From Macrostomum lignano (taxonomy: Eukaryota), in NCBI GenBank assembly GCA_002269645.1, contig NIVC01000490.1, positions 1-41,171 on the forward strand: a stretch of 41,171 bases of DNA, in the 5' to 3' direction. The number at the start of each line of letters is the position of its first letter. Positions within the stretch are counted from its first letter, which is position 1. The notes under the pieces were generated by a model. That model searched no databases and had not been told where the DNA came from. It saw nothing but the letters and a program-made list of their open reading frames with translations. The position numbers were made by a program, and so were the translations under genes. Shown here in pieces: positions 1 to 18,600 of the stretch.

Positions 1-319
1 GCTTGTAGTGTATAGGCCCTTGGCCCTACTAAGTCTATTACTAATTGTCAAAAGACCTACGTAGATTGTCTTCAAAGTCTGCTGTGATACACCTTGCCGC
101 AAAACTGAAATGAAACTAAAAAAGCGCATATGCAATGCAAACTTGTATATAATGATATTCGTTAAATAACTAAAAACTGCTTGACATTGGCTAGATTTTA
201 CCATTTGAAAATTGCCTATCAAGCGTGTTACAACAAACAGTTGTATTTATATAAAAATTTGCTCCCCTTTTATATCTATCACTTAAAAGCTTTTGAATAA
301 AGGTATCAGAAAAATTCTT

Positions 320-428
320 GAATCTTGTCTCGAATTTCTTTGACAAAATTTGAGATTTCTCGAGATGAGAAAAAATGTTGAGATCTTGTCTCAAATCTTG
401 TCTCGTCGAGATCTTCGTGACAGCTCTA
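320..428. mobile_element. Probable right end of a hAT-like non-autonomous element (other end not found in window)
   Basis: Repeated TCTTGTCTC(G/A) subterminal motifs at 323, 384 and 397, ending in GTGACAGCTCTA (reverse complement TAGAGCTGTCAC), a terminus style typical of hAT MITEs. No partner TIR or TSD seen. Confidence 0.35.
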
Positions 429-1035
429 ATAAGTTAATAGTTTTTTGGTATTCTTTATAAAGATAAATTTTATAGTTTTTTGTTTGAAATTTAAGTAAAT
501 TTATTTAATTTTATTACTGTTTAAAATTTAAAATTTATACTTTCAAAATAAATAAATATATCTCATGGCGATATTCCCATTTAACCTTATTTTTTCCATA
601 ATTTATACAAATTAGATTAGCTAATAATTAAACATATCATAGTTTAAACCAAAGAATGCTTTTTTGCTAATGCTAGGAAATTCTAGCATATTATTGTTTT
701 TCACTAATAGTCTTAAACCTAATATACTAAGAATTTTTAAGCCCTCTAATAAACATTTTTTAATATTTAGTAGTTAAATATAGTAAATTATACCTCATAA
801 GTAATAAAGTTAAAGTTTCAATTCTATTAAATAGCCTATGACTAAATAAAAATATTAGGGAGGCCTACTTATCTTTTAGATCTTTGACTATAAATTTTTA
901 TATGAATTTAACTTTTACTTCATTTTAGTCATTTGGTAAACATACATGCGCAACTTCTGAAATTACGCTGGCCGTGCGACTTAGTTTTCGATAAAAAATG
1001 CGACTTACCTATGAAAGAGCCAAGCAAAAACTTTA

Positions 1036-1113
1036 GGTAAACGGCAGGAGTAACTATGACCATATTTTTAAAGCTAAATGCCTCGCCAGCTAATTAGTGC
1101 TGCGTGCAGATTC
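1036..1113 (+). pseudogene. Degenerate fragment of eukaryotic 28S rRNA (helix 69-71 region, the R2 / I-PpoI target region)
   Basis: GGTAAACGGCaGGAGTAACTATGAC matches the recalled 28S consensus at 24/25 nt. AAATGCCTCGcCAgCTAATTAGTG matches at 22/24 nt, with correct order and spacing, followed by AGATTCC. No other rDNA nearby. Confidence 0.78.
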
Positions 1114-1524
1114 CGCGTTTTTATAACAGCTAATCCGTATGTCATCTAGTGGCGGCATGAAGCAATTAGTAAATTGTCAGTACAGTGTAGTGAGCATACT
1201 ACAAAAGTCATGATTCATGAATGTCCAGAAGTAAGTGAAGTGAATACAGTGTGACCTATAGCTCAAGAACGATTTGCTAGACGATTTGGCATGGAAGATG
1301 AGAGCCCTGATTCAGATGGCTCATCAGATGCAGAATACGAATCCAGTAGAGATACAAGCTGTGAAAACCCACATATTTTTAAACCACTGAATTCTAATTC
1401 CCGGAACTATTTTTGCATAGATTCTAAATTTGAAGTCATGCTCAAACAAAAACTTGTTAACAGTTAGGAAAAAGGCAAAGATGGGAGTAATGCATGTTAA
1501 ACTAAGATTTGAGGCCTTTGCAAA

Positions 1525-2184
1525 TTCTCTCCATTCCTCAATCTTCTCATCCTCTTTTTCTTTTCTCTCTCATCCCTTATCCCTTCTCTCTTTCCTCTCC
1601 TCTCCTATCTCTTCTGTCTCCTCTCTACATTCTTATCTCTCCTCTCGTCTCTCTCCATTCCACTCTACTCTACTCTCTCATCTTATCTTCCCTCTCGTCT
1701 CTCTCCACTCTACTCTCTCATTATCTCTCCTCTCTTTTCTACTCTCTCATCTCTCCTCTCTTCACTCTCCTCTCATCTCCTCTTTATCCTCTCTTCTCTC
1801 ATCTACTCTCTCCTCTTTCCTCTTTCCTCTCTTCTGATCTTATCCATCATCTTTTCTTTCCTCTTTCCTCTAATCTCCTCTTCTCTCTCATCTCTTTCCT
1901 CCCTCAGCTTTTCTCTCCTCTTCTATCTTTTCTCCCATCGCATCGCTCGCCTCTCCTCTGTTTGCTTATCTCTAATCTTCTATTCCCTCTACTTTGAAGT
2001 AAGAAAATATGCACATATTTTTGCTGAAGATAAGAGGAGAGAAGAGGGCATTGAGGAGAAAGGGTAGAGAGAAAGGGGGAGAAGAGAGGAGAGTAAAAAT
2101 GAGAGGAGAGAGAAGAGGGAAAAGGGGGGAGAGAGAGAAGAGGGGAGGCAAGGTAGAGAAGAAGAGAGAGATGAGAGTTGAAGA
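1525..2184. repeat. Low-complexity polypyrimidine (CT) tract ~1525-1990 followed by polypurine (GA) tract ~2026-2184
   Basis: Almost pure C/T, then almost pure G/A, on the + strand. The L/S- and E/R/G-rich ORFs reported here are compositional artefacts. Confidence 0.9.
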
Positions 2185-2249
2185 GACACCAACCTTGCTA
2201 CTCGTAGTTAGGAAGTTTCAAAGAACCCGAGGGGCGAGGGCCAGATAGA

Positions 2250-2282
2250 GGGGCTTCGCGAGCCGGAGTTTGCCAACCCCTG
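2250..2282 (-). mobile_element. hAT (Charlie/MER58-like) terminus nested in the 941-3648 element
   Basis: Reverse complement reads CAGGGGTTGGCAAACTCCGGCTCGCG, a classic hAT-MITE end. It is followed by CTCCAGAG, resembling the NTCTAGAN 8-bp hAT target. Partner end not found. Confidence 0.5.
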
Positions 2283-2406
2283 CTCCAGAGTTTAAGAAAT
2301 GACGCGGGCTTCTGATTTCAAAGATCTTGTCTGTGGTTGAAGGCTTCTATTCTGTTTTTGCTCTCCTGCCACACTTGCACCTACTACCCCCTGATTGCCT
2401 CTGATT

Positions 2407-3470
2407 GTGACTTACTTCCCTCTTATTGCGACTTAGTTGCTTCTTTTTGCGACTTACCTAATCCTTTTTGCGAATTACTTAATCCTTTTTGCGACTTACC
2501 TAATCCTTTTGCGACTTACCTAACCCTTTTGCGACTTACCTAATCCTTTTTGCGACTTACTTAATCCTTTTTGCGACTTACTTAATCCTTTTGCGACTTA
2601 CCTAACCCTTTGCGACTTACCTAACCCTTTGTGACTTACCTAATCCTTTTTGCGACTTACCTAATCCTTTTTGCGACTTACTTAATCCTTTTTGCGACTT
2701 ACCTAATCCTTTTGCGACTTACCTAACCCTTTTGCGACTTACCTAACCCTTTGCGACTTACCTAACCCTTTGTGACTTACCTAATCCTTTTTGCGACTTA
2801 CCTAATCCTTTTTGCAACTTACTTAATCCTTTTTGCGACTTACCTAATCCTTTTTGCGACTTACCTAACCCTTTGTGACTTAGCTAATCCTTTTTGCGAT
2901 TTACTTAATCCTTTTTGCGACTTACCTAATCCTTTTTGCGACTTACCTAACCCTTTGTGACTTAGCTAATCCTTTTTGCGACTTACCTAACCCTTTGTGA
3001 CTTACCTAATCCTTTTTGCGACTTACTTAATCCTTTTGCGACTTACCTAACCCTTTGTGACTTACCTAATCCTTTTTGCGACTTACCTAATCCTTTTTGC
3101 GACTTACCTAATCCTTTTGCGACTTAGCTGATCCTTTTGCGACTTACCTAACCCTTTTGCGACTTACCTAACCCTTTTGCGACTTACCTAACCCTTTTGC
3201 GACTTACCTAACCCTTTTGCGACTTAGCTGATCCTTTTGCGACTTACCTGATCCTTTTGCGACTTACCTGATTCTTTTTGCGACTTACCTAATCCTTTTT
3301 GCGACTTACCTAATCCTTTTGCGACTTACCTAACCCTTTTGCGACTTACCTAATCCTTTTTGCGACTTACTTAATCCTTTTTGCGACTTACTTAATCCTT
3401 TTGCGACTTACCTGATCCTTTTTGCGACTTACCTGATTATTTTTACAACTTAGTTTGCTTCTTTTGCGAA
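2407..3470. repeat. Minisatellite, ~21-22-bp unit GCGACTTACCTAA(T/C)CC(T)nT, roughly 45-50 copies
   Basis: Direct reading of tandem units with variable T-run length. The same TGCGACTTA core occurs singly at 975, 999 and ~3575. Confidence 0.95.
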
Positions 3471-4582
3471 TTGTTTTTCTTTTGCTTCATTATTTTCCCT
3501 GAACTGCTCTTTCTTTCGCTTTCCTCTTGCCTTTCTTGGTTCTTGTGTTTTTCTGTTTTTGGTTGACTCAATTTTGCGACTTACCCCTGGTCAGCCACGA
3601 TTTACGGTGGCCGGATCGGCCAGGTCGGCCAGCAGTTGCGCATGTATGTTTGGTAAATATTGTAAGGTTAATATTTATAAAATTGTATTTTATTTTGTCC
3701 AACAAATATTATTTTAAAATTCAATATTTTTTTGCCAAATAAAGCCTAATAATATAGAAACAAAATAGCAAACTATAAAGTGGTATCTAATTATAATATT
3801 TGAATAATATTTGTAAGTCAATCCATACTCCTTGCTTAAAATAATCTATTTGGTTATCTAAGTATATGTTTAAACTCATAGCTAAAAAGTTATCAATAAA
3901 CATAATTTTATTAATGTACTTATCAAACTAGTAGACTTACTAATACTATATTCATTATATATTGTTATAACTTTGAATACAATAAGTGATAAAAATGTTC
4001 AATTCAAGTTTGGTTATAATTTTTTAAATGACCTCTATAAAAAAGCCTAAATAAACAAATTTGCTAATTAATAATTTTTTGTTCCATAAGTAAAAGACGC
4101 AGGGTATTAATATTAAGTTTTAATCAGAGAGATAGATAAGAGATTAGTGGAATAGTAGAATGATATATATAGTAAGGTTGAGGCATTGAGCAATTAAAGT
4201 TAAAGTGTAAGTTAAGCTAGGCAGATACAAAATGGAATGAAAGGGAAGCAAGTATAAATGTGCTGACTAACAATAAAAAATAGCAACATATATAATAAAT
4301 AAAAAGTACTATTTTATGCTTGCATTAAAATTTATTAGATTGATTTTATTAGAAATGGATTTGATTAGAAAATATCAAACCTTAAAGAGTGAATAAGTTA
4401 TTGAAATTTATATTTACAAAGCCAAGGTTTAAGTTGGCACTATAGCATTTTTAATCTGAAATAGAAAGTTGTTTGATTCCATTGCTAATTATTATCTTTA
4501 TTAAGTTGGCAAAAAATTCCAAAATGAAAGTAAAAACTAGCTAGTCAATTAATATTTTTACCCATTTTTTCACCTCTCACAG

Positions 4583-4750
4583 GCAGTGCTCCAGTGCCAG
4601 ATTCTGAGCCCTGACCAATGCAAGCAGTCTGGCTTCACTAGTGCTCTAGAGTGCTCCTCTTGCTCGCAATTGAAGCAGTTCGGCCTGTCTCAGTTGGATC
4701 AAGCCTGTCAGCAGTGCTGCAAAGGCGACAGTCTAGACAGTGCCAAACTG
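4583..4750 (+). CDS. SELENOF: Selenoprotein F (Sep15), internal exon with the Cys-rich N-terminal domain
   Basis: Acceptor ttttttcacctctcacAG, donor GTaatt. Translates AVLQCQILSPDQCKQSGFTSALECSSCSQLKQFGLSQLDQACQQCCKGDSLDSAKL, matching the Sep15 pattern C..GF...L.CSSC..L.QF.L.QLD..C..CC. Phase 0/0. Confidence 0.93.
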
Positions 4751-4951
4751 GTAATTTGCTGACTGCTGAACTCTTCTTCTACAACTCTGCTTTTGTGAAT
4801 CAGTCTATTTGGTTTGCAGTGCTGTGTATTTTTTTGTTTGATCACTGTGCCAATCGTGGTATTCAATAATCTGCTTCTGTATTCAAGCATCTGATTCAGT
4901 CAATCTTCTTTCTTTTCTCTCGACTGCAACTCGCTATCTGGCCTGCAAATC

Positions 4952-7705
4952 ATGGCTGATCGCATGCAAGACCAATCTGTTCATACAGCTGTACGACCTG
5001 GAGCAGCCCCGGGCAAGGAAGCCAGCTCGGCTAAGCGAAATCCTAATATAGTGATGCGCCAGCCACCTGCCGAATCAGCAAATAGAAACTCGTCCGATTT
5101 AGATGGCGACAATATTCAACCGCCTCAGCAGCCGCCGCCAGTTGCGCCGAAGCCTAAAGGCAAGAAAAAAGATAAGAAAGAGAAAGACAAAGACAGAGAG
5201 AAGAAAAAGAAAAAAGACAAGGATAAGGACTCTGCTTCATCGCCGCCAGTGCCACCGCCGCCAGTAGCGCAGCCACCACTGCAGAAAGAGCCGCCCCCGT
5301 CAGTGCAGCCAATGCCTTCCCAGGCGCCGCCGCCACAGACACAGCCTGCGCCACCACAGCCGAAACCGCGCTCTCACGCTTTGCCTCAGACGGTGCCGTC
5401 ACCGCAGCAACTGCCTTCGCCTACTCTACCGCCTCCCCAACCAGCGCAGGCGCAGCAGCAGTTGCGATCTTCGTCTCTGCCTCGCAATCAACCGGTAAAT
5501 GCGAGCGGATCCACCAGCGGAGCTGTTACCGCATCCGCTGCTCCTATGTTGCCTAATGCCGCAGTCGCTGCTGCAGCAAGCAAGCCGCAACAGTCTCAAT
5601 CGTTCCATGGCACCACCGCTGCCAGCCAGCCATCCGCCAGCGCCGTACCAGTTGATAATTTCGGTCCTGGCTTAGTTGGCATTGTTAATCACGGCAATAG
5701 TTGCTACATGAATGCCATAGTGCAATGCATCTGCCATGTTGACCCGCTGGCGCACTACTTTGCGTCCGAGCTATACCTACAAGACCTGTACGCGGGCACA
5801 GTTGATAAAAAAGGCCGCCCCATCCCACACGAATATCGCACCGAACTCACCGAGGCATTCGCTCAGCTATTAAAATCGCTTTGGTTTGGCAACTATCAGC
5901 CTCAACTGTCTGACAATCTTCGTCAGATTGTTGCTCAGACTCGACCGGAACTGGCTCTCCGGGATCAACAGGACGCCCACGAGTTTATGCTGCTGCTCCT
6001 GGATCATCTCCACGATGAGCTCAATGGCTATAAACGACAGCCTAAGGCTAAACAGAAGCCGCCGCTACCCCCTTCTGTCAATGCCGACAGTGCCACTTTT
6101 GCCGACGACCACGCTCAAAGAAATCGTTCCGTTGTCTACCAGTTGTTCTATGGTTACCAGCGCAATCGTCTGCAGTGTCCTGGATGCAGTTTCACCACCA
6201 GCACTACGGAGCCTATCACATGCTTGTCTCTGCCAATTCCTGTAGGCACAACCCGAGCGCTCACTATCGTACTAGCTGACGAGCGCGGCCGTCAGACTCG
6301 ATTCGGCTTGGAAGTTGCTGCTGATGGTTCTGTGCGCGAGCTTCGACGCAGTTTGACAACTCGCTGGCAGCTGGAGGATCCCCGTCATCTGCTCCTGTGC
6401 GAACTTGGACCAAACGGATTCTGGCGCACATTCCGCGACACGGATTCCACGGCTCTGTTGTGCGAGCTGGGCGAAGCAGGCAGCCTCTATGCTATTCAAC
6501 TGCCCAATCCAGTTATGGACGATGGCGACGATTCTGACTCGAGCGACTCAGAGCCCGTCTATCGACCGGACGGTATCGGTGCTGGCATCCGACCCCAGGA
6601 AGAGGACCTTAGCTACATTCGCATCGTGTCCGTTCACTGCGAGCGCACCCGCAGCGGAGAGCTGCGCCGCTTTACTGGCCCGCTGCACACTCAGCTCCAG
6701 GTACACTGTACTCATGCCGAGCTTAAAGAGGCCCTACTAACCGAACTGGAAAGGGCTGGAGATCTGGCTCGAATTGCTAATAAACGCGATGTCTATGTTG
6801 AACTGCGCCTTGTTGACGGACCTCCGCAGTCCTCTGTCCTCCAGCAGAATCAGCGTTCACCGCCTCTTGTTGGTCCCGCTGTAGACCGGGCATTGAACTT
6901 TAATCTGACCGATGGCGGGCCGCGTCATCTTAAACTCACAGTTGTCTGGGGTGTCGCCGAACGACAGCGCTACGCTGCCGCTTACGTTGATGAAATTGAA
7001 GCCGACGCTAGTCTTCGGACGGCGGCTGCTCAACAGCAGGACAGGCCAGTCAGCTTGCAGGACTGTCTGGCCGAGTACATGCAGGGCTTCCCAGCTTCTT
7101 GGATGTGCCCGAACTGTCGCCGAGTTCAACAAGCTGAACAAATCTCACGAATGTGGACTTGCCCTGATCTGTTGGTCATTCAATTGAAACGATTTCAACA
7201 GACTGGAACGCGCAAATCCAAGGTTTCCGCTTTTGTCCAGTTTCCTATCGAATCGCTGGACATGTCCGAATACCTTGACGAGGAGAATCTTGGCCGCCTG
7301 AATCCTTACTCGCTGTCTGCCACTGGCCGGCATCCGCAGTCAGCAACGCCAGCCGATTTCACCTACGATCTGGTTGGCGTAGTCAACCACACTGGCAGCC
7401 TACAGTCTGGCCACTACACCGCCTTCACGTTGAGTCAATCTGATCATCAGTGGTGGCGATTCAGCGACGGCCAAGTTGAAGCTCTGTCCGACATGACCGC
7501 TGTTAGCTCTTCGGATGCCTATCTGCTCTTTTATCAGCGCAGAACTCTTCGGGCCATTTTTGTTAACAATGCTCACTGGAGTGTAGCGATCGCACAGCAG
7601 CAAATGTACGAGCAACAGTTTGAGCAGCAGCCGCCTCAATCACAGCCGCTGCCATTCCAATCGCTCAATTTGCCACGGACGCGTCTCTGCCGCGAGAAGA
7701 TCTAG
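4952..7705 (+). CDS. USP31/43: Ubiquitin carboxyl-terminal hydrolase (peptidase C19), USP31/USP43-like; intronless; probably extends to 7995
   Basis: Cys box GIVNHGNSCYMNAIVQC, QQDAHEF, CPGC/CPNC zinc ribbon, LVIQLKRF, His box VVNHTGSLQSGHYTAF and WWRFSD. The insertion CLSLPIP...LLLCELGPNGFWRTF...HLKLTVVW resembles the USP31/43 ubiquitin-like insert. Pro/Gln-rich N-terminus. Confidence 0.9.
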   Translation: MADRMQDQSVHTAVRPGAAPGKEASSAKRNPNIVMRQPPAESANRNSSDLDGDNIQPPQQPPPVAPKPKGKKKDKKEKDKDREKKKKKDKDKDSASSPPVPPPPVAQPPLQKEPPPSVQPMPSQAPPPQTQPAPPQPKPRSHALPQTVPSPQQLPSPTLPPPQPAQAQQQLRSSSLPRNQPVNASGSTSGAVTASAAPMLPNAAVAAAASKPQQSQSFHGTTAASQPSASAVPVDNFGPGLVGIVNHGNSCYMNAIVQCICHVDPLAHYFASELYLQDLYAGTVDKKGRPIPHEYRTELTEAFAQLLKSLWFGNYQPQLSDNLRQIVAQTRPELALRDQQDAHEFMLLLLDHLHDELNGYKRQPKAKQKPPLPPSVNADSATFADDHAQRNRSVVYQLFYGYQRNRLQCPGCSFTTSTTEPITCLSLPIPVGTTRALTIVLADERGRQTRFGLEVAADGSVRELRRSLTTRWQLEDPRHLLLCELGPNGFWRTFRDTDSTALLCELGEAGSLYAIQLPNPVMDDGDDSDSSDSEPVYRPDGIGAGIRPQEEDLSYIRIVSVHCERTRSGELRRFTGPLHTQLQVHCTHAELKEALLTELERAGDLARIANKRDVYVELRLVDGPPQSSVLQQNQRSPPLVGPAVDRALNFNLTDGGPRHLKLTVVWGVAERQRYAAAYVDEIEADASLRTAAAQQQDRPVSLQDCLAEYMQGFPASWMCPNCRRVQQAEQISRMWTCPDLLVIQLKRFQQTGTRKSKVSAFVQFPIESLDMSEYLDEENLGRLNPYSLSATGRHPQSATPADFTYDLVGVVNHTGSLQSGHYTAFTLSQSDHQWWRFSDGQVEALSDMTAVSSSDAYLLFYQRRTLRAIFVNNAHWSVAIAQQQMYEQQFEQQPPQSQPLPFQSLNLPRTRLCREKI

Positions 7706-7995
7706 GCGACGGCGGCGAGGTAGCGCTCAGGCGATCCGCGCGTCCGCCACAGGCTACTCTACCTATCAACCTCATTCCTAATATGATGCCTGCACCTCCG
7801 CCTCAGCCACAGGCGCCAATTCTGTCCATTGACGAGACAGCCAGCGGCATGACTGTTAAGACTGGTCGAGCTCGGATTCACGTTCCAGATAGTAAGAAGC
7901 GTCAGGGCAAATGGGTGTGGCGCGGCGGCGTCAAAGTCTGGGACGGTCCGGATCCGCCGCCACCGCAGGAGCAGCCGGTGCCGCCGCCTGAATGA
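7681..7995 (+). CDS. Probable true C-terminus of the USP protein in a shifted frame
   Basis: An overlapping open frame (7624-7995) reads ASLPREDLGDGGEVALRRSARPPQATLPINLIPNMMPAPPPQPQAP...PPPE*. It has the same GC-rich, Pro/Gln-rich style, and GC drops only after 7995. Confidence 0.6.
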   Translation, partial: ASLPREDLGDGGEVALRRSARPPQATLPINLIPNMMPAPPPQPQAPILSIDETASGMTVKTGRARIHVPDSKKRQGKWVWRGGVKVWDGPDPPPPQEQPVPPPE

Positions 7996-9483
7996 TCAAT
8001 TGGTCCAAATCTGCTGCAGTCGTTCGCTCTTTAAAGACTTCCCATCTCTCTGTTTCTCCGCTTTCTCGATTCGTCTTTTCTACGCTCGTACGTGACTTTT
8101 TTTCTTGTCTTTTAAAACATGCCAAGCTTTACTAACTGACTTGACTTTTAAAGAATTTTTGTTACTAATTGTTGAGTCGAATTTGGCGTCAAGAGAAGGC
8201 ACAGTTTCAGTGTGCTCAAAGTACTCCAGAAGAGAGCTAGCATATCAGCTAAGTGTAAAGTATTGAATGACAGTAAAATATTGTGTTAACCAAAGCGTAT
8301 CGATGTTAGATTTATTGACGTGTATCTAATAGCTATCATTAAAAATATGAAAAACTTCTAAATGATTCCACATTCGACTTATACACCACCACTTCAACAA
8401 AAAACTTTTTTGGAGTAGCATACCAACTTGACAAAATTATATTGTTAACTTTCCATTTGCCATGCATAGGCTAGTTTTAGTTGTTGAGAGGACATTTCTC
8501 CTTTAGTATCTCTAGTATGCATCCATCTTTTTGTAGAACTGAGCCATTTATTGCAACTCGGTTATAAAATACACAATCAGTCCAATAATTACAAAACCTC
8601 CTCCGCTATGTTTTTTTCTAAAGACTAACCAAATCTGCTTGGCTGTGCCTGCATTGTGATGTGATGCGCTTATTAATAACTGGCGCTTATTACTTAGTAT
8701 TTTAGTTCGGCATATATGATTCCATATTTACAAATTTAATAAATATTGCTTAAAATTTGTTTTTTTAAGCAACAAAATTTCTAATGCCACTATAGACATT
8801 CCACAATAGGTGAAGCTCTCTATACGAAGGCCTGTTGACTGCACATTCCTGCGCTCCATGTGTTTTTGCAACTCTCTGGTTACTTGTACTTGTATGACAG
8901 CACCTTTTTAGTCCGGGCTGTCTGGTTACATTTTGATTATTCTACGAGCTATGCTATTTAATGCTCTTGTACGTTTCCATTTAATTGTATATGAAAAGTT
9001 TTTCTCTGTCCCTGTGTACTGCCCCACATTCCGTGATCCTATTGGCTATTACATTCCAGTATGCTGATATTCAATATTATCAGCAAATATTCTACCTTTA
9101 TGACCTTCTTGATTCACGTTGACTTTTTTGATTAATTCTTCACTCTAAAATACCAATTCACCCCAATCTGATTCGATCAGTTTTAGCTGTGCATGCGACT
9201 CATTTAGCTAACAATATCTATTAAATATTAATAAAGTCGATATGAAAAGTGCAGATTTGCACATTCATAAAAATCCCAAACAATACATGTGCCCTTTTAC
9301 TATTAACAGTTATTAAGTACCTGAAAAGCGATTCAAAATGTCTTAAAATTGTTGCGAATTGCTTGAGGTCTTAATCATTTTTTGCCATAGTTCATCAATG
9401 CCAACTCATTTAGGCACATGTAGATGAGGATAGGCTTAGCAACAAGATCATCGTCATTATTTTCTCTTTTAATTTCGTTTTAG

Positions 9484-9547
9484 CGCTACCAATTTGCTGA
9501 GCTGGAGATATGCGGATGAAAACTGGGCAGGTATCCACAGATTGAGG
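9484..9547 (+). CDS. SELENOF: Selenoprotein F exon carrying the selenocysteine codon (TGA 9517-9519)
   Basis: Acceptor ttcgttttAG, donor GTAAGT. Translates RYQFAELEICG-U-KLGRYPQIE, matching the Sep15 redox motif LEVCGUKLGRFPQ. Confidence 0.96.
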
Positions 9548-10179
9548 GTAAGTTATTAAAGTTAATGCTAAATTTTCGTTTTTCATTTACTATACTAATA
9601 GTATCGAGGTTTAAGGTATAGGCAATTTTTTAAGTTCATAGACTTAGAAATAGTTGTACGTGTATGTCCAAGTATCCTACTGTTTCGCAAGTAGTAGAAA
9701 GGGTGTCAAGTCTGACTGTTCTATTTAACTAGTTGGTTTTGGTTTTATTATTTGTATGAACGTAGTACGCGCGACACTTGTTGACGGAAATCTTTGAGTT
9801 TTCAGCAGTTATATATCGTAATTTCGAAGCATATTTTTCCAATTTTAACAGCCAATTTAAAATGAATGTGATTTAATACTTTCACTATGAAATCATTTTA
9901 ATTTTGTAATAATTTAAACACAGCGAGCTTGAAATTTGGAAGTTACGTAAAGAAGAACAATTCATATCGGATTGTACCTGCGTGTAAAACGATGTCGTCG
10001 TTAAAATTCAATAAAATAAACGTCTTTGGATACAGTTTTAACACAGAGTAGTCTGACTGACTCAAGCTGTAGCTTTTAAAGTGATAGATAATAAAACCAA
10101 AATAAATTTAAAGTTAACACAGTCACCGCACAAGCTGAAACTCAAAGTTAGCCAATTCTGGCAAAACTGGATATTGCAG

Positions 10180-10367
10180 CATTCATTAAGTCGAACCGAC
10201 CGTCTCAGTTCCCGGGCTTGAGCATCAAGTACAAGCGGGGCGCTGAGCCGGTCATCCGGCTGATGCAGGACGAGGCTGCCAGGTCTGCTGGCACCGGTGA
10301 GGAGTTCGGCATCGATCGATGGGACACTGACACTCTGGAGGAGTTCCTCCGGGAGCGACTGGTGTAG
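10180..10367 (+). CDS. SELENOF: Selenoprotein F terminal exon
   Basis: Acceptor ttgcAG, phase 1, compatible with the previous exon. Translates (A)FIKSNRPSQFPGLSIKYKRGAEPVIRLMQDE...EEFGIDRWDTDTLEEFLRERLV*, matching the Sep15 C-terminus (KYVRGSDPVLKLL...W.TD.VEEFL.E.L). Confidence 0.95.
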
Positions 10368-10788
10368 AGTTCAGTTCCTTGAGTTGGTTACTATAACAAG
10401 GCCATGGGGTGCTAAGTAAAACATTGCAATTGATAAAATGAAATTATAGCAATAATGGGCTAAATTATGCATAAAAATTGATAACTGCATTGATAGCAGT
10501 TAGCTGAACTGACTTAAAAAAGCATTTCATGGTCTTAACTAGTTTCAACAGACAATCGGTTTACATTTGATGCTTCGAGTCTAAGGGATACCTGCGTTAC
10601 CAAAATATCATACTACTTTATTATTAAAAATGAAGCTGGGGAAGGGGCAAGTGAATGATCAAATTGCTTTTGTCGATTCGCTTTGCTCTGTAGCAAAAGC
10701 GAAAATGCGTAGCAAAATGAACTTTAATGGTCTGCAATTAGTCGGTTTGATATTAAATATAGCTATGTGTTGTCGTTATCCCACAGCT

Positions 10789-10865
10789 AAAAAAGCGCTC
10801 ATGACGCCATCGAGTAAAACTGACAATTTTGCAGTGCTCGATGAGCTGATTCTATCTGCTTTTTT
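10789..10865 (+). promoter_or_regulatory. Type II SECIS element in the SELENOF 3' UTR
   Basis: Helix I AAAAAAGC/GCTTTTTT; core ATGAC (10801) opposite TGAT (10847); helix II GC-CATCGAG/CTCGATG-A-GC; unpaired AAA bulge; apical mini-stem ACTG/CAGT. Lies ~430 nt after the stop codon. Confidence 0.93.
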
Positions 10866-12179
10866 ATTCTGCTTGGGATCCGCAGAATTGTTGCTTTTCC
10901 CTCTACAATGTTACATAATATTAGTCTTGCTCTCAACTTAATGTAGTGTTACAATGCATTAATAGTCTCTGGACAGTGCGAAAACCAGCATTGTTTAGTT
11001 TCACAAGCTTCCACAATTAATCAATTTGAAATAAATTTGAGCACAAAGCGCACGCTTTCAGTGTAGCATCGTCAACTTTCTGAAAAGTGGTTTTTACTGC
11101 AACTGTATTTAACCAGAGTAACTATTTTGATGAGCGAGCAAATCTTCATTCCAGATGCAATCCAGTACAAATATGCGTACAATTATATAACTATAAGTCC
11201 CTTTCGGTTCGCTCACGCCACCATTAATGAAGCCTTTGAGCCAACTAATTTTTTTCTGAATCAATTGTTACCATTGCTGAACTACATGTATATTAGTCCA
11301 AGGCTATATTAGTAGAACTGCACTATTTTGAAAATAAACGCAAATTAACGCAACAATGTATTTTTGAATCCAGAAATTCGAGCCTTAAACCAAACGCATC
11401 CCTAACAGAATGCTTGCACTAACCCAGACAAAGCTCCGTTGTTGCTCGTAAAGCCGTCAAACGGCTAAGATATCAACATTGCTTACTTCTATCATTCAGC
11501 TGTACTACTGTACGCCGAGTAGCACTCGACACATTGAAGCATTTTTATCAGAAATAAAAAAAAAACATTAGATACCGTTTTATACTATGCAGTAACGTTA
11601 GTGCAAGAGTTAAACCATTTACATGTACAAGCGGTAGCCATATTGTACGCTCGTATTTTACATGTAAGAGCGGTTTAGCAGTGTAATTACTAGCTATTTT
11701 TATTTCAATTTCCTAATGAAAGTGCGAATTCACTAGTTAGCTCAAAGTACGCTATATTCATAGCTAGTAGCTAATGCAGTGCATAGGTCGTACGAGCGTA
11801 CAGTGTATTTGTCTTGAAAAAGTTGACAGGCAAATAATACACCTAAGTGATATTGGGCCACGTGTACATCCTAAAAAAAGTTTAAAAGTGCCGATCATTT
11901 TGTATTTGCTTAAGGCTGCTTGGGTTCAAGTACTATAATTAGCTCAGCTTGCATAATTTAAGGCTCCAACATATTAATAAAATTAAAGCGAAATAGTAGT
12001 GACAAACAAGCAAGTTTGAAGGCTCGTTCACACACCGCCATCGAATAGTAAGCCATGAAACCGACGCAAAAAATAGAAACCCAATGAAAAGTGAGGTGCA
12101 AGTTGTGTAATCACTAAAAGGGGTGCAATTCATACCTCTAAAAATGTCGACAGCACCTCTCATAGTTCCGACAATTTCT

Positions 12180-12643: not shown

Positions 12644-15600
12644 CTACTTGAGATCCCAATAGTGGTGGCTGTAGTAGTCGGGCACTCTGATGTTGAACTC
12701 CTTCGCCTTATATTCCGGCTGCCGGTCCACAGGCCGAAGAAAGGCGGGTCGCGGTGTCGTACCGGCGCTGCAGAAATTGGCCAGCTCGATTTTACCGTCG
12801 ATTTCGGTCACACGGGAGGGCCCGATAGTCACCCGAAACTGGGAGACGCGAATCAGAGGATGGACTCGGTTGATGTAGCTCTCCGGCTCTTGAGGCAGTT
12901 GGTCCGGCAATTTCTCGCGAATGCTCACTGGTAGAATGTCTCTACAATCAGTGATGCAGGACTGCATAGCTTTTCTGGCTTCATGGAAGTCTTCTGGATC
13001 ACTCCGAGTGCACACTGAGCAGGAATTATCGAAGTCTCGCCAGCTCTGGTGTCCATCCAAAGTTCTTTGAGGTGCCTCGAACTCTCTATTGAAATCCGTC
13101 GTGGCCTTATCCACCAGCAGTTTTAGCTGTTGTTCGGTATTTTTATAGTCTGGAACTTCAAAGTCGCAGTTGATCTGGCTTGGCACTGCTTCCAGTTTGG
13201 CCTGAATTTCCGCTTTGATTGAGCGACACTCGGAATCGAATTGCCACCATTCTTGATCTGATTCTTTTGCGCTTACAGGCAGAAACTTACAGGCAGTGGC
13301 TGCGTCTGAGCTGAAGTCGATTGAACTTGAAGGCTCCGGTGCCTCAGTGAGGCTTTTGGCTGCCTCTGTCAGTGAACTGAACGGCTGTGGTGCCTCAGTG
13401 GGGCTTTTGGCTGCCTCTGTCAGTGAACTGATCGGCTGTGGTGCCTCAGTGGGGCTTTTGGCTGCCTCTGTCAGTGAACTGATCGGCTCCGGTGTCTCAT
13501 GGAATTCGACAGCTGTTTCTGAGAATCTAGGATCATTGCTGATTCTCTCCTCAACATTAGTCAATGCGTTCAACTCCCAAGGAGTGAGGAGGCGCTCTTC
13601 AAGTTCTTTAGCTAGTGAAGCTTGAGTAGTCTTAGGATTCATTTGAGTCGGAGAAGACAAACTGAAAGCTTCGTTGTGACGTGTGTAAGCACTGGAAATG
13701 CTTGCAAACGGAGATGTAGCCTTTGTTGTGATGGAACCTTCGAAGCCAAGGTGCTCAGTATATCTGCCATTGTTTCGCATACCCTGTGTTTTCTCATCCA
13801 GTGTGATCTGCTTAGCTTGTATTGTATATTCCTGCAGATCGATTCCACCTGACTCGGCTATGAGGCAGATCTGCTTTAAGGACGCAACGCAAATATTTCT
13901 GAAGCTGATGGACGGAGCGGCAAGTGTTATGCCGAATTTCAGAGCAAGTTCCCTTTCTCGGAACTCATTGCCAGAAAGTTTGATTGGCTTTCTAGTTTTT
14001 ATTTTCAATACATTCCTGACACACTCGAAAGTTTTTGCATTGATGAATCGGACCAAATTCTCCTTGTCAAAACTTGGGCAGTCAATTTGAAGTTCGTCAA
14101 ACTGGCAGTCTTTTGCAGCTCCAAAATCTGGCAGTTCTGATTCTGAGCGAATAAGAAAAGAAGCTGCGGTGATTCCACTGTTCACCCGAATTCTGCCCGA
14201 TGAAGTGACCTGCAGGCTGGAATCCACTTTTAGGCTCCCGATGTGCAGCTCGCTAGCGCAGTCAATACGAAGTGACTTAATAAATGAGATCTCTCCATCA
14301 ATACTGACAACTCTTGCTGATACTGCCACTTCATCGCTAATCAGGCACTTGCGAATATGCACTTTGCTGGCAGCACTGATCCAAGATCTTTCACTCGTGT
14401 CTGCACCATTTATTTCCACTTCGCTGCCCTCTAGGTGGAAGCTTCTGCATTTGGAATTCTCTAATTTGAGCAACCCCTGCTTGCCAAATGACTTCACTGC
14501 ACCGTTAAGTTGGCAGTCCGATAGACTCAGTGATCCGGACACAAACAGACTGCACCTGTTGCTCACTCTGGCCCCGTGGATAAAACCATCATGACTGCGC
14601 AGTGTTAGGGATGCAGAGAACTCCGGGTTTTCCATTTCACAGCGCTCACAGTCGATGCTCACATTTTGATCGAACCTGCAAAGTTTCATTGCGTCAAATG
14701 TGTGACATTTCAACGTCACTTCTCCTTTGAATCCACAGCACTCGCTAATTGAAATTTTGTTGAATTCGTCGATTTTAAAAGTCAACTCTGTTGAAAATCC
14801 TTCAATCGTTGCAGTGGCCGAAGCTTTGGATCCTTTGGGGCAAATCCAGGCTGATCCAACTTTGGCAGTTTTAATTTCCAGCTTGTTCACTTTCAATACA
14901 AGCTCTTGCTGAATGTCTGTTTCACCAGCTAAGACAAAAGAGTCGCATGACAGTTCCGTGTGCTTTAGTGATGAAGTCAAAATTGACATATTTTCCACTG
15001 AGCCCTTTAGCGAATCAATAAATCCTGAGCTTATCTTACATTGTGTCGGCTCAGCGCTCAAAATCAGCATCGAAGTCTCAACATTTTCTAGTTTTATATC
15101 ATTACCGGTCAAAAGAGCTGTATTCTCAATCGTCACGTGACTCAACACAACCGTCTTGGGTCTCGAATTCACTTGAAGCTGCATTGTCCTGATGTTTTTT
15201 ATGTTCACAGCTGTTCCTTCAGCGCATGTTTCAGGGCCAGACATCACAAGCAATTCTTTTGTGAATCCTTCGCTTTCTTGTTTGGAATTTCTACCGTCTA
15301 GATCAAGCACCCTTGTCTGTACCTGCATTCGATCCTGCACCAAAACACCACAAACCATTGTAACATCTGCTTTTAGTAGAAGGCTTTCAATGAATTCACA
15401 CGCGGTCACCTGCGCAGTAGTTTCAACTTTCGCTTCAACCTTTTGAACACAACAGCCTTGAAGTTGGAGTTTTTTTGTCTTAAGTTGGACCTCTGCATAT
15501 CGCAAACTTTTGATCTCGCAAATGTTTGAGGCGCTGACTTGAATTCTGGTAGCATCAGTGTCTGCAACGCGGACTTCGGCGCTCTGGATGCAGGCTGTAT

Positions 15601-18600
15601 CCCGAATGTTGCAGCCAGTCATTGTGAACTGAGCATCCGCTTGAATGGTACCGTTTTTGAAGACGCATTCCGTCAAGGCGATGTTCTTGCCAGCGAGTTC
15701 GACAGAGTCGATTCTCGATACGAGATTCAACAGCACTGCTGGTGCGGCCATGGTTTCTTTGGCGTGAATGAAGAGACTTGTCTGCAGTCCAAAAGTGCTT
15801 GTAATGCAGCAACGCCTGCACACGGCTGTTACCTGACCAATTTCTGAGTCACTGATTGCCAGAATGCCGTTACTTTGTACTGTCAGATTGTGCAGACTGC
15901 AGTTTGACTTGATTCGTACATCACCCGAAATTCTTTTGAAGACGACACTGTTAACGATTTCTGTTGTCGATACTGAGGCGAAAAGTGCATCAGTAATGTT
16001 TATCTCTTCCGATTTTACTGCGAGCAGCCGGACTCCCACGATTCCATTTGTCGTACCCGTGACTTCTAGAGTGCGTGAAAAACATTGCGCAACTCGAGCT
16101 GCTATCGAGACAGTCAGTTTCATATCCGACTGAGATTGACAGTCGGAAATGCACAGTCTACCCGAGTTCAGCCAACTCAGACCTACCGAGTTGAGATCAT
16201 GAATGTTGAGATAAGAATTTCCTATATCCACATGGAGACTTCCGACTAGGAGTTGTTTCAGTGTTGTATGACCCTTGGCGATGACGACTGTGCTCTTATT
16301 TGTAATGAGCCTTTCGACATTCACAGACGAATCAGCCAGTAGTTTGAAATGGTCCAGCTGACAATCGCTCACAGTAACATGACCCAAACTGGCAACATCA
16401 CAGCCTTCATCAATCATCAGCCTCTCTAAGATTGTGTTTCCTCTTGACAAGATCTTCAGGGACTTGCCGCTTGAGTCGGACATTCTCAGCATTCGGCAGG
16501 AGATTTCAATGTCCTTCTGGACTTCACACATTCTTACTGTAGCTCCCACTGAACAGCCACGAAGTTTCATCGAGCCCAGTAAGCTGGCAAACGCGTGCGC
16601 AGTTTCTGACCAGGCTACGAGGTCGCCAAAGACGCTAGATTTGGACAGAAGAAAACCACTGTAAGCATCTACATGCATTTTCTCTGTCTCTGTCTCGAAA
16701 AATTTTAACTGCTTTCCCTGGAATGCCAGTCTAGTGAATTTGTTTTGTTTTGACGTCAAATCTGAGCAGAAAGCGACGAATTCGTCACTCATCGATTGCT
16801 CAATGGATAATTCTCCTTCTTTAGGGCATATGAACCAAAGTTTGGAGAGCATAGTTTCACTTACTTTTGCTTTGAAGCTGCATAACACCAAAGTTTCAGT
16901 GACATAAACATTTGCAATTTCGAAGTTATTGCTCGTGCAGGTTGCTGTTCCTAGACAGGTCTTTGTTGAGCTACCTGCAATCTTCGTCATGTTACTAGAG
17001 CGAACTTCTAAATCGGTGACGCTCGAGTCAGTTATTGTAATATTTTCAGCTTTGACAATTTTAAGTGCAGCAGCTAATAAGTCGTCAATTTGAAGGTCGG
17101 AGCACGAAACAGTCAGGTGCTGTGCTTCTACCTGCTGAATGCTGATTTTCTCTTCTGCGGTACAGTGCAAGTCTTTAAGGAAACAAAACTCACCGATGCT
17201 AAAGTGTCGCTTAGTTTTTGCCAAGAACTTTTCAAACACGTGCGATGTTCTTACCAGCAACTCATCAGTGACGTTGCAATTTAGGTTAGTAAACGAGCAC
17301 TTTAGAATCTGGCAGGAGTCGCTCAATATTGTGCAGTTTTCTAACTTCGATGACTCTAGCTTAATGCTGACAAAGCTATCAGATGCTATTAGATAGGTTT
17401 TAGGCGCAAATACAAGCTTTGCATCGAGTTCATTGGAAATAATTGCCTCCAAAATCTCTGTGCTTGTACTATTCACGATACTCGCTGATTCAGACAGTAA
17501 ACAAAGTCTCTCAGATGCTAAATTGCCCACTCGAGCATTCTTAGCGGTGATCCAAACCTCCGTCTCACCAAGGATCTCGTCAATGCCGAGGCTTTCCTCC
17601 GCGGCCATCAGCAAATTCCGTGCTGACCAGATTCCGTACGCTTCAATTTGAGCACTTCTTAGAGTTACAGAGGCTTCTTCAGATGTCAAGCTTCGAGTCT
17701 TCAAGAGTTTCTCCGCAAAAATGTGCACATCCCCAGTGCACACAAGCCATGTTGTTGGCTGATCGGACCAAAGCTGGGCACAGACGGATTTGATGAGGGC
17801 TCCATCCTTCACCGCCATGGAGCCATCAGACCGCCAGCTTTCACAATCATACATGACTTTCTGGGCCTCAATTCGAGTAGGTCCGATCAGGCACAACCAC
17901 CGACTTCGTTCGAACAGTCCGTTTGATTTCAGCGGCGTCCAATCGCACTTGTAAAGCTTCTTCCAGTAATCCGATAAGTCTTCTTCTGTTTCAGAAAACC
18001 CTTCCTTGATGGAAGCAGTAAAGCCTGCAAGCAGACTAGCAACTGAGGAATTTCTCTGCAGACCAGAAGTCTCTGTCACCGTCTGAAGTACCATTTTAGA
18101 TGCAGCCGAAACAACCTGGGCACACCGATTATGATTTTCTCTGAAAGCCTGTGCAGCGTCTAGCACCATGATTTTCAGTGCGTCACACATCTGATTGCTT
18201 GAATCTGGCTGCAGTACCTTTTCTAAATCTTTGATTGAAGCCTTCAGCTCGTCAGACCCCGATTCGATATCTGTGCAAATTTGTTCGGCAAAGCCAAAGT
18301 GCAATATGCTTCTGGTGGATATCGTTGGGCTACACAGCTTTGAAAATATCGTGATGAGGGCACAGCTTTTCATTTTTAGCGAATTTTTGGCCTGAACGTT
18401 TGCTGGTGTGAATTTGCTTGCATCATCGCCATCGTCGCGTTTACACAAGTGCATTAGCACTTTTCCGTTAAGTATGACATCTTCTGCACTCAGCTGACTT
18501 TGGTTGTAAATAAGCTTTGATGCTGAGATGGAGAGCTTCGAACGACATTTTAAGCTTCCAACGACAAGAGCATTTTCCGCTTCGCAAGCAATGGATCCCG

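What the first reader, a model, noticed from the sequence alone, without database searches (positions are those of the whole stretch)
4583..10865. Intronless USP31/43-like gene nested on the same strand inside a selenoprotein F intron
Seen: SELENOF exon 4583-4750 splices in phase to 9484. The 4.7-kb intron contains a complete 2.75-3.0-kb DUB ORF starting only ~200 nt after the donor, on the same strand. Same-strand nesting is uncommon. Inference: a retrocopy or operon-like arrangement in which one transcription unit yields either SELENOF (splicing across the DUB) or the DUB (intronic processing or trans-splicing). This could couple DUB output to selenium-dependent handling of the host mRNA.
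Basis: partly seen in the sequence, partly recalled or inferred. Interest (0 to 1): 0.7.

Follow-up and report, generated by a model that had tools for sequence, protein, structure and literature searches.

The report
Deubiquitinase gene nested in SELENOF intron
In the flatworm Macrostomum lignano, a working single-exon deubiquitinase gene sits on the same strand inside an old intron of the selenoprotein F gene; the arrangement is real, conserved and missing from public annotation, but it is an ordinary nested gene and nothing links it to selenium.

Summary
The window is Macrostomum lignano, 99.9% identical to GenBank contig NIVC01002681.1. SELENOF exon 4583-4750 joins exon 9484-9547 in phase 0; that exon carries an in-frame Sec TGA in a CGU motif. 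It is followed by exon 10180-10367 and a SECIS-like hairpin at 10792-10859. GenBank transcript-derived proteins already contain the 4750|9484 junction.

The 4,733-nt intron holds a single-exon USP31-like gene (4952-7995) on the same strand, starting 201 nt after the donor. The window copy has a 1-nt deletion near 7676. All three GenBank homeologous copies carry intact ORFs of 1,014-1,016 aa and the same nesting.

The USP gene is under purifying selection (dN/dS 0.09). A distant relative has the same layout: its Logan contig starts exactly k-1 = 30 nt before the homologous donor, which points to RNA containing both spliced and unspliced forms.

- **Retrocopy:** no hallmarks found.
- **Misassembly:** excluded.
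- **Selenium coupling:** unsupported.
- **Expression route:** untested. I favour co-transcription with SELENOF, release by spliced-leader trans-splicing and polyadenylation inside the intron. An internal promoter is the main rival.

This is a new member of a known kind, of modest interest.

The parts
1..4582 (+). 3' part of SELENOF intron 1. Exon 1 lies 716 nt upstream of the window. The region includes a homeolog-specific insertion at 940-3760 with a 21-bp tandem array at 2422-3452.
   Evidence: Exon 1 peptide is absent from the window and found at L003 4701. Tandem repeats. The insertion is absent from L002.
4583..4750 (+). SELENOF exon 2: end of the signal peptide plus the Cys-rich N-terminal domain. 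Phase 0 at both ends.
   Evidence: 100% identical to UniProt A0A1I8GQE5 and to GenBank PAA55969.1.
4751..9483 (+). SELENOF intron 2 (4,733 nt), the host intron. Donor GTAATT, acceptor ttttag.
   Evidence: The junction is present in GenBank CDSs. The intron position is shared with the rotifer SELENOF, where the intron is about 50 nt.
4751..4951 (+). 201-nt spacer between the host donor and the USP start codon. It contains no ATG and is the presumed USP 5' UTR or outron.
   Evidence: 0 ATG against 2.7 expected (P = 0.06). The relative's 182-nt spacer also has 0 (P = 0.09).
4814..4819 (+). TTGCAG, the only match in the spacer to the M. lignano SL trans-splice acceptor motif [T/C]TNCAG. Candidate only.
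   Evidence: The motif comes from PMC8629364.
4952..7995 (+). Single-exon USP31-like deubiquitinase CDS. It would be 1,014 codons if the 1-nt deletion near 7676 is disregarded; as assembled it is a 917-aa ORF to 7705 plus an out-of-frame conserved tail.
   Evidence: Pfam UCH 4e-60. Intact ORFs of 1,014-1,016 aa in L002, L003 and L004. 72% identical to the 1,010-aa P0001 of a relative. dN/dS 0.09.
7672..7681 (+). Site of the 1-nt deletion. The window reads GCCAC-GGACG, L003 reads GCCACCGGACG, and L002/L004 read GCCACGGGACG.
8338..8343 (+). ATTAAA, the first candidate poly(A) signal after the USP stop. Candidate only.
8738..8743 (+). AATAAA, the second candidate intronic poly(A) signal. Candidate only.
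   Evidence: Homeolog divergence and a 65-nt indel peak at 8500-8700.
9484..9547 (+). SELENOF exon 3, with the Sec codon TGA at 9517-9519 in the CGU redox motif.
   Evidence: GenBank CDSs stop at this TGA.
9548..10179 (+). SELENOF intron 3 (632 nt, phase 1). Donor GTAAGT, acceptor tgcag.
10180..10367 (+). SELENOF last coding exon (Sep15/SelM redox domain C-terminal part, stop TAG).
   Evidence: Identical to UniProt A0A1I8JHL5.
10792..10859 (+). SECIS-like element in the SELENOF 3' UTR.
   Evidence: Rfam SECIS_1 17.8 bits, below the gathering score of 35. Fold -26.7 kcal/mol, z = -3.5, with AUGA...AAA...UGAU. Identical in L003 and L004.
11030..11035 (+). AATAAA, the first canonical poly(A) signal after the SECIS. 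Candidate end of the SELENOF mRNA.

Best explanation
Shown:
- The locus is the Macrostomum lignano selenoprotein F gene.
- Its ancient phase-0 intron 2 harbours, on the same strand, an autonomous single-exon USP31-like deubiquitinase gene with intact catalytic Cys and His boxes.
- Both genes are functional.
- The nesting is present in all three homeologous copies of the GenBank assembly and in a distantly related species.

Inferred:
- RNA polymerase starting at the SELENOF promoter transcribes through the USP gene, so each primary transcript has two exclusive fates.
- In the first fate, the 4750 donor pairs with the 9484 acceptor. The USP is discarded in the lariat and SELENOF mRNA results.
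- In the second fate, the spliced leader is trans-spliced to an acceptor in the 201-nt ATG-free spacer (candidate TTGCAG|4820) and the RNA is cleaved and polyadenylated inside the intron (candidate signals at 8338 or 8738). USP mRNA results and the SELENOF 5' exons are lost as an outron.
- The non-consensus donor GTAATT, conserved in the relative, may set the balance between the two fates.
- The single-exon state of the USP is what is expected of same-strand nested genes, because selection acts against mis-splicing. It is not evidence of retroposition.
For: Structure:
- Exon coordinates, phases and the Sec TGA.
- Pfam Sep15_SelM and UCH.
- SECIS-like element.

Reality of the locus:
- The window is 99.9% identical to NIVC01002681.1.
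- Two further contigs, about 95% identical, have the same nesting and intact USP ORFs.

Splicing across the USP:
- GenBank CDSs join exon 2 to exon 3.

Function of the USP:
- dN/dS is 0.093 between homeologs.
- Against the relative, pN is 0.16 with pS saturated at 0.82, and the C-terminal tail is constrained too.

Conservation and co-transcription:
- The relative's Logan contig L001 carries 30 nt of SELENOF exon 2, then GTAATT, 182 nt of spacer and the whole USP ORF.
- Thirty nucleotides is exactly k-1 for Logan's k = 31 graphs. That is the signature of a graph branch at the exon/intron boundary, meaning RNA in which the donor is both used and left unused.

Organism context:
- 30-39% of M. lignano genes are SL trans-spliced, about 7% of assembled transcripts are multi-gene precursors, and the acceptor motif is [T/C]TNCAG.
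- One such motif lies in the spacer.
- Neither species' spacer contains an ATG.

Single-exon state:
- Same-strand nested genes are typically single-exon.
Against: - No SL-containing read, 5' end or poly(A) site was observed for the USP.
- L001 contains no SL sequence and passes through the spacer without a graph break. That is not what a dominant SL junction would be expected to produce.
- The spacer shows no significant sequence conservation between the two species, and the relative has no [T/C]TNCAG motif there.
- Only 44% of known M. lignano acceptors carry that motif in any case.
- An SL, which ends in ATG, joined at 4820 would open a 25-codon upstream ORF.
- The RNA nature of SRR30276804 is inferred from contig geometry, not read from metadata.
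Confidence: 0.5

Rival explanations
1. The USP31-like gene is an independent nested gene with its own promoter, lying in SELENOF exon 2, the spacer or late intron 1. It shares only chromatin neighbourhood with its host. Host transcripts simply splice it out, and host read-through contributes little or nothing to USP mRNA.
For: - This is the default for nested genes. In Drosophila, nested and host genes are not co-expressed more than neighbouring genes are.
- The ATG-free spacer in both species fits a conventional 5' UTR starting near the host donor.
- L001 shows no SL and no graph break in the spacer.
- 60-70% of M. lignano genes are not trans-spliced.
Against: - Host transcription must still traverse the USP and its poly(A) signal on the same strand, so some interaction is unavoidable.
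- The relative's contig extends into host exon 2. A transcription start site would therefore have to lie upstream of the last 30 nt of that exon, or those reads are host pre-mRNA.
- There is no recognisable core promoter element in the 201 nt, by inspection.
Confidence: 0.33
2. Shared-5'-exon architecture, as at the cholinergic ChAT/VAChT locus. USP mRNA starts at the SELENOF promoter and is made by alternative cis-splicing of exon 1 or 2 to an acceptor in the spacer (for example a 69-nt intron, 4751-4819), followed by intronic polyadenylation.
For: - It is the closest described precedent for a co-oriented intronless ORF in a 5' intron.
- A CAG acceptor at 4817-4819 lies 69 nt after the donor.
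- Cis- and trans-splicing share acceptors widely in flatworms.
Against: - The shared exons here are coding. Exon 1-2 spliced to 4820 would give an upstream ORF of about 95 codons ending at 4894, leaving the USP as a poorly translatable second cistron.
- The relative's contig keeps the spacer unspliced.
Confidence: 0.08
3. The USP is a retrocopy: a processed mRNA of an intron-containing USP31/43 parent that inserted into the intron, possibly recently and possibly non-functional.
For: The CDS is single-exon. An ancient retroposition origin cannot be excluded, because its hallmarks decay.
Against: - No A-rich tail remnant and no flanking direct repeats.
- Strong purifying selection.
- Same position in a species diverged beyond synonymous saturation.
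- No second, closer M. lignano USP31-like protein in either database search.
- Large intronless ORFs are common in the neighbourhood.
- Single-exon status is the norm for same-strand nested genes.
Confidence: 0.06
4. The nesting couples DUB output to selenium status through Sec-dependent handling of the SELENOF mRNA. Alternatively, the 4.7-kb insert is a misassembly.
For: None beyond physical linkage.
Against: - Misassembly is excluded. Three GenBank contigs, the window and a relative's contig all show the exon 2-USP junction, and the three contigs and the window also carry the USP-exon 3 side.
- Selenium-dependent decoding and decay act on spliced cytoplasmic mRNA, after the intron is removed. 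This is established knowledge.
- The TGA is 28 nt from the last junction.
Confidence: 0.03

Closest known systems
Same-strand single-exon nested genes in introns, catalogued genome-wide in Drosophila melanogaster (Lee and Chang 2013, PMC3814207)
   Same: A complete protein-coding gene lies inside one intron of a host gene on the same strand and is itself single-exon. That is the typical state: 73% of same-strand nested genes are single-exon, explained by selection against mis-splicing.
   Different: The organism has pervasive SL trans-splicing, so host read-through RNA could be converted into nested-gene mRNA, a route Drosophila does not have. The nested gene is large (3 kb) and old, not a short young duplicate.
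Polycistronic transcriptional units and operons resolved by SL trans-splicing in M. lignano (Wudarski 2017, PMC5730564; Ustyantsev and Berezikov 2021, PMC8629364)
   Same: Two co-oriented genes separated by about 200 nt in an organism where 15% of genes are in operons and about 7% of assembled transcripts are multi-gene precursors. A [T/C]TNCAG motif lies upstream of the downstream ORF.
   Different: In an operon the upstream gene ends, with its poly(A) site, before the downstream acceptor. Here the downstream gene is embedded in the middle of the upstream gene, so the two mRNAs would be mutually exclusive rather than both made from one precursor. SL use at this gene has not been shown.
Cholinergic gene locus (VAChT/unc-17 inside the first intron of ChAT/cha-1)
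   Same: A co-oriented, intronless ORF sits within a 5' intron of a host gene and the arrangement is evolutionarily conserved (and general knowledge).
   Different: There the shared 5' exon is non-coding and the two products act in one pathway. Here the upstream exons are coding, no shared-exon transcript is known, and no functional link between SELENOF and a USP31-like DUB is established.
Vertebrate USP31 and USP43 (peptidase family C19)
   Same: UCH domain with Cys and His boxes separated by a long insert. The only hits covering more than 70-90% of the protein include one whose cluster NCBI names USP31-like (29-32% identity). The nearest solved structures are the USP15, USP4 and USP11 catalytic domains.
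   Different: It has a long Pro/Gln/Lys-rich N-terminus and a short conserved C-terminal tail (…KRQGKWVWRGGVKVWDGPDPPPP) that was not found outside the Macrostomum relative. One-to-one orthology was not established.
SELENOF / Sep15
   Same: Signal peptide, Cys-rich N-terminal domain, CGU motif with in-frame TGA, Sep15_SelM domain and a 3' UTR SECIS-like hairpin. The intron position is shared with the rotifer.
   Different: The intron before the Sec exon is expanded from about 50 nt (rotifer) to 4.7 kb by the resident gene.

Membership tests
SELENOF/Sep15 | Sep15/SelM thioredoxin-like redox domain | tested here: met
   Pfam PF08806, 2.3e-22, 79 bits against a cutoff of 26.
SELENOF/Sep15 | CxU redox motif with Sec encoded by an in-frame TGA | tested here: met
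   ELEICG-TGA-KLGRYPQIE at 9484-9547, TGA at 9517-9519. It aligns with CTC in the rotifer Cys homologue.
SELENOF/Sep15 | SECIS element in the 3' UTR | tested here: inconclusive
   Rfam SECIS_1 scores 17.8 bits, below the gathering score of 35, and there was no hit at the gathering threshold. The element has an AUGA/AAA/UGAU core, folds at -26.7 kcal/mol with z = -3.5, and is identical in two homeologs.
SELENOF/Sep15 | N-terminal signal peptide and Cys-rich domain | tested here: met
   The Cys-rich exon 2 is in the window. Signal-peptide exon 1 (MQVVTAFLIVLQA) lies outside the window, 716 nt upstream on L003.
USP deubiquitinase (peptidase C19) | UCH catalytic domain with Cys box and His box | tested here: met
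   Pfam PF00443, 4e-60, over the full 254-position profile. GNSCYMNA and SGHYTA motifs are present in the translation. USP15, USP4, USP11 and USP8 structures hit at 1e-55 to 1e-44.
USP31/USP43 subfamily | Closest full-length relatives are USP31/43, including the inter-box insert | tested here: inconclusive
   Among named proteins, the best hit belongs to a cluster that NCBI names 'USP31-like' (72% coverage). Only a few hits cover up to 93% of the core, while USP8, USP50, USP20 and USP33 hits cover 18-40%. No reciprocal search or phylogeny was done.
Same-strand intron-nested gene | The whole nested CDS lies inside one host intron, on the same strand, and the host splices across it | tested here: met
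   Coordinates. Host junction in GenBank CDSs. Three contigs agree.
Retrocopy | Poly(A) remnant and target-site duplications | tested here: not met
   No flanking direct repeats and no A-tract.
Retrocopy | Intron-containing parental paralogue elsewhere | not testable with these tools
   No other M. lignano USP31-like protein appeared in two database searches, but the whole genome could not be scanned.
SL trans-spliced polycistronic unit (M. lignano) | SL added at an acceptor upstream of the downstream ORF | not testable with these tools
   Only a motif match was found, TTGCAG at 4814-4819. No reads were available, and there is no SL in L001.
SL trans-spliced polycistronic unit (M. lignano) | Both genes on one primary transcript | tested here: inconclusive
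   The relative's contig joins host exon 2 to the full USP ORF and starts k-1 = 30 nt before the donor. This is compatible with pre-mRNA, but the library type was not verified.
Cholinergic-locus-type shared 5' exon | Common 5' exon alternatively spliced to the nested ORF | not testable with these tools
   No transcript data were available. The predicted product would be bicistronic.

The most novel reading that the evidence does not exclude
SELENOF and the USP31-like gene form a conserved 'intronic operon'. A single promoter drives both genes, and regulated competition at the conserved weak GTAATT donor partitions each primary transcript. Cis-splicing to the Sec exon gives an ER redox selenoprotein; SL trans-splicing plus intronic polyadenylation gives a deubiquitinase. 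The outputs of the two proteins would then be reciprocally coupled, possibly in ER protein quality control.
Probability: 0.15. Interest if true: 0.55.

Novelty: new member of a known kind. Interest (0 to 1): 0.3.

Why it matters
There are three practical points.

1. A conserved 1,014-aa deubiquitinase gene of a model flatworm has no CDS in the GenBank Mlig_3_7 contigs examined. It also has no M. lignano entry in the protein collection searched.
2. Its host selenoprotein is mis-modelled in both public annotations. GenBank stops at the Sec TGA, and UniProt skips the Sec exon.
3. The locus is a clean, conserved and experimentally tractable test case for how an SL trans-splicing organism handles a same-strand gene inside an intron. 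M. lignano has transgenesis and RNAi, and SL and 3'-end read sets are already public. The question is splice-out versus trans-splice plus polyadenylation.

If the competition model holds, it would extend the operon concept to mutually exclusive products. If it does not, this is simply one more nested gene.

Tried and rejected
- **Rfam at gathering threshold over the whole window.** Nothing was found. The SECIS appeared only in a permissive local scan.
- **Exon 1 of SELENOF in the window.** Exact words and permissive tblastn both failed. It lies outside the window.
- **Exact-sequence look-ups.** The window's 917-aa ORF and UniProt P0050 are not on record.
- **Spacer conservation between species.** Local alignment of the donor-to-ATG spacer scored no better than shuffles. 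A by-eye similarity around a CAG was therefore dropped.
- **Homeolog divergence profile.** It was meant to delimit UTRs or regulatory blocks. It is confounded by mosaic gene conversion: L004 switches from about 95% to 99.7% identity near 8660.
- **Second homology search, catalytic core only.** The aim was to find other flatworm orthologues with genomic context for synteny. None was returned.
- **Literature and supplement searches.** Searches for Mlig008417, USP31 and SEP15 in M. lignano papers found nothing.
- **SL sequence in the window and fetched loci.** Absent.
- **Short intron to bridge the two USP frames.** Rejected. The relative and the three GenBank copies align continuously, and the difference is a single base.
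- **GenBank g2 CDS start as evidence for trans-splicing.** This partial CDS starts exactly at exon 2 base 1, which could suggest SL trans-splicing at 4583. I judged it ambiguous, because g1 and g4 start 24 nt further in.

Full report
**What is in the window**

The interval 4583-10865 contains three exons of a selenoprotein F gene on the + strand.
- Exon 4583-4750 is 168 nt and phase 0 at both ends, between cag| and |GTAATT.
- Exon 9484-9547 follows ttttag|. It reads RYQFAELEICG-TGA-KLGRYPQIE, with the TGA at 9517-9519. It ends in phase 1 before GTAAGT.
- Exon 10180-10367 ends in TAG.
- With Sec written as Cys, the spliced product matches Pfam Sep15_SelM at 2.3e-22.
- A SECIS-like hairpin lies at 10792-10859. 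It is sub-threshold in Rfam (17.8 bits against 35; no hit at gathering). It nevertheless has the AUGA / apical AAA / UGAU core and folds at -26.7 kcal/mol, z = -3.5. An AATAAA follows at 11030.

Between the first two exons lies a 4,733-nt intron. It holds a + strand ORF at 4952-7705 (917 aa; Pfam UCH 4e-60 over the whole profile). The ORF starts 201 nt after the donor.

**Identity of the locus and reality of the arrangement**

- The SELENOF product is identical, exon for exon, to Macrostomum lignano entries. UniProt A0A1I8GQE5 and A0A1I8JHL5 skip the Sec exon. GenBank PAA55969.1, PAA56522.1 and PAA55962.1 (BOX15_Mlig008417 g2, g1, g4) read ...DSAKL|RYQFAELEICG and stop at the Sec TGA.
- Those GenBank CDSs come from the transcript-guided Mlig_3_7 annotation. 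They span 4.9-5.0 kb on their contigs. The 4750|9484 junction is therefore already supported by public transcript evidence.
- The window is 99.9% identical to contig NIVC01002681.1 (L003). Two other contigs (L002, L004) are about 95% identical homeologous copies.
- All three contigs show the same nesting, which excludes a misassembly.
- SELENOF exon 1 (MQVVTAFLIVLQA|GTAAGG) is not in the window. It lies 716 nt upstream of window base 1 on L003.

**The nested gene**

- After the 917-aa ORF, a conserved tail continues in another frame to a stop at 7993-7995.
- The cause is a single missing base near 7676. The window reads GCCAC-GGACG, L003 reads GCCACCGGACG, and L002/L004 read GCCACGGGACG. All three GenBank copies encode uninterrupted proteins of 1,014-1,016 aa. 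The break is therefore an assembly error or a private allele, not a property of the gene.
- The start codon is conserved with the relative, where an in-frame stop lies 15 nt upstream. The CDS is single-exon.
- The Cys box (GNSCYMNA) and His box (SGHYTA) are intact.
- The nearest solved structures are the USP15, USP4 and USP11 catalytic domains.
- Only a few database hits cover more than 70-90% of the protein, and one belongs to a cluster NCBI calls USP31-like. USP8, USP50, USP20 and USP33 hits cover only the catalytic boxes. 'USP31/43-like' is a fair label, but orthology was not proven.
- Between M. lignano homeologs dN/dS is 0.093. Against the relative, pN is 0.16 while pS is saturated at 0.82, and the C-terminal tail is constrained as well. 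This is a functional gene.
- No CDS is annotated for it on the three GenBank contigs, and no M. lignano copy exists in the protein collection.

**Conservation of the nesting**

- The closest homologue is P0001 (1,010 aa; 72% identity overall, 83% over the core). It comes from a 3,365-nt Logan contig of run SRR30276804 (L001).
- L001 begins with 30 nt resembling the end of SELENOF exon 2 (…GACAATACCAAACCG against …GACAGTGCCAAACTG). Then come GTAATT, a 182-nt spacer and the complete USP ORF.
- Logan graphs use k = 31. A contig that starts exactly k-1 = 30 nt before the G of a donor is what a graph branch at the exon/intron boundary produces. In that sample the exon continues in two ways, spliced and unspliced.
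- I infer that the sample is RNA, that the homologous donor is used, and that RNA molecules run from the SELENOF exon into the USP gene. The library type could not be checked.
- The nesting is therefore older than synonymous saturation between the two species.
- It is not ancestral to SELENOF. In the rotifer Adineta steineri the gene spans 576 nt, and the homologous phase-0 intron, immediately before the K/R-Y that opens the redox exon, is about 50 nt long. The USP gene thus came to occupy a pre-existing, ancient intron in the macrostomid lineage.

**Origin**

I found none of the usual marks of a retrocopy.
- There is no A-tract after the 3' UTR and there are no flanking direct repeats.
- No second USP31-like gene of M. 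lignano appeared in the searches.
- Neighbouring ORFs of 3,176 aa and 1,610 aa are also intronless.
- In Drosophila, 29% of nested genes are co-oriented with their host. Of these, 73% are single-exon, attributed to selection against mis-splicing.

The intronless state is therefore expected and says little about origin. An ancient retroposition cannot be excluded.

**How it most likely works**

Shown:
- SELENOF mRNA is made by splicing across the USP gene.
- The USP gene is functional and conserved.

Inferred:
- Host transcription must traverse the USP gene on the sense strand. Each host transcript is therefore either spliced, so the USP is lost in the lariat, or processed at USP signals, so SELENOF is lost.
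- In M. lignano 30-39% of genes receive the 35-nt spliced leader, 15% sit in operons, and about 7% of assembled transcripts are multi-gene precursors.
- The spacer contains one match to the trans-splice acceptor motif, TTGCAG at 4814-4819.
- The spacer is ATG-free in both species (0 observed against 2.7 and 2.2 expected; P = 0.06 and 0.09), as a 5' UTR would be.
- Candidate poly(A) signals lie at 8338 and 8738.
- The host donor GTAATT departs from the GT[A/G]AG consensus and is the same in the relative.

I therefore favour co-transcription with SL trans-splicing plus intronic polyadenylation, at about 0.5 for the full statement. The structural part I put at 0.95 or higher.

Against this model:
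- No SL junction was seen.
- L001 has no SL and no graph break in the spacer.
- The spacer is not detectably conserved, and the relative lacks the motif.
- An SL ending in ATG joined at 4820 would add a 25-codon upstream ORF.

The main rival, at about 0.33, is an internal promoter near exon 2 or the spacer. A cholinergic-locus-style shared exon (about 0.08) would yield a bicistronic mRNA and seems unlikely.

**The selenium idea**

Nothing supports coupling to selenium status. Sec decoding and selenium-sensitive mRNA decay act on spliced cytoplasmic mRNA, which no longer contains the intron; this is established knowledge. The TGA also lies only 28 nt upstream of the last exon junction. Under the mammalian 50-55 nt rule that predicts insensitivity to nonsense-mediated decay. 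Any coupling would be at the level of a shared promoter or of splice-site competition.

**Verdict**

The nesting and the family label hold. The operon-like idea is plausible but untested. The retrocopy and selenium ideas are not supported.
- The arrangement is a new, unannotated example of a known kind: a same-strand, single-exon nested gene in an SL trans-splicing organism. No paper in the library mentions it.
- Interest is modest (0.3). Its value lies in correcting the annotation and in offering a tractable test case for competition between cis- and trans-splicing.

Noticed in passing
window 940-3760 (CT-rich 1545-1921, GA-rich 2033-2144, 21-bp tandem array 2422-3452): A 2.8-kb block of low-complexity sequence and about 50 copies of the 21-bp unit CTTTTTGCGACTTACCTAATC sits in SELENOF intron 1. 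It is present in the window and in L003 but absent from the homeologous contig L002 (L004 not separately resolved), so it is a copy-specific insertion.
   Followed up: partly
window 7672-7681: A 1-nt deletion breaks the USP ORF in the window only. The 99.9%-identical GenBank contig and both homeologs are intact, so an assembly indel or a private allele is likely.
   Followed up: yes
window 9484-9547 and 10180-10367; L002, L003 and L004: Public SELENOF models are wrong in two ways. The GenBank CDSs (PAA55969.1 and others) are 5'-partial and terminate at the Sec TGA. The UniProt models skip the Sec exon and use a cryptic acceptor (ttaag|TCG) inside the last exon.
   Followed up: yes
window 4952-7995; L002 10347-13397, L003 10370-13414, L004 10346-13390: The 1,014-1,016-aa USP31-like gene has no annotated CDS on any of the three GenBank Mlig_3_7 contigs. 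No M. lignano entry for it exists in the 5.8-billion-protein collection.
   Followed up: partly
window 4583: The M. lignano spliced leader ends in ATG. If it were trans-spliced to the exon 2 acceptor it would be in frame (M+AVLQCQ...) and would give a SELENOF lacking most of its signal peptide. The GenBank g2 partial CDS starts exactly at exon 2 base 1, but g1 and g4 start 24 nt further in, so this is only a lead.
   Followed up: partly
window 12644-22174 (-): A 3,176-aa uninterrupted ORF with no Pfam match. GenBank annotates only fragments of 953 aa and 1,318 aa at the corresponding places in L003 and L004.
   Followed up: no
window 31476-36308 (+): A 1,610-aa uninterrupted ORF with SecA_DEAD-like, DEAD and Helicase_C domains. 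SecA-type motor domains are unusual in an animal gene.
   Followed up: no
L002 17428-23320: A 5.9-kb insertion relative to the window lies downstream of SELENOF. It carries a 650-aa hAT-type transposase-like gene (Dimer_Tnp_hAT, FAM200-ZBED5 RNase-like) and is present in this homeolog only.
   Followed up: no
L004 compared with the window, breakpoint near window 8660: L004 is about 95% identical to the window left of 8660 and 99.7% identical to its right. This suggests gene conversion or recombination between homeologous copies inside the host intron.
   Followed up: partly
L002 2979-3815 (-), L004 2663-3505 (-): The upstream neighbour of SELENOF is a VPS28 gene on the opposite strand, about 4.3 kb before exon 1.
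   Followed up: no
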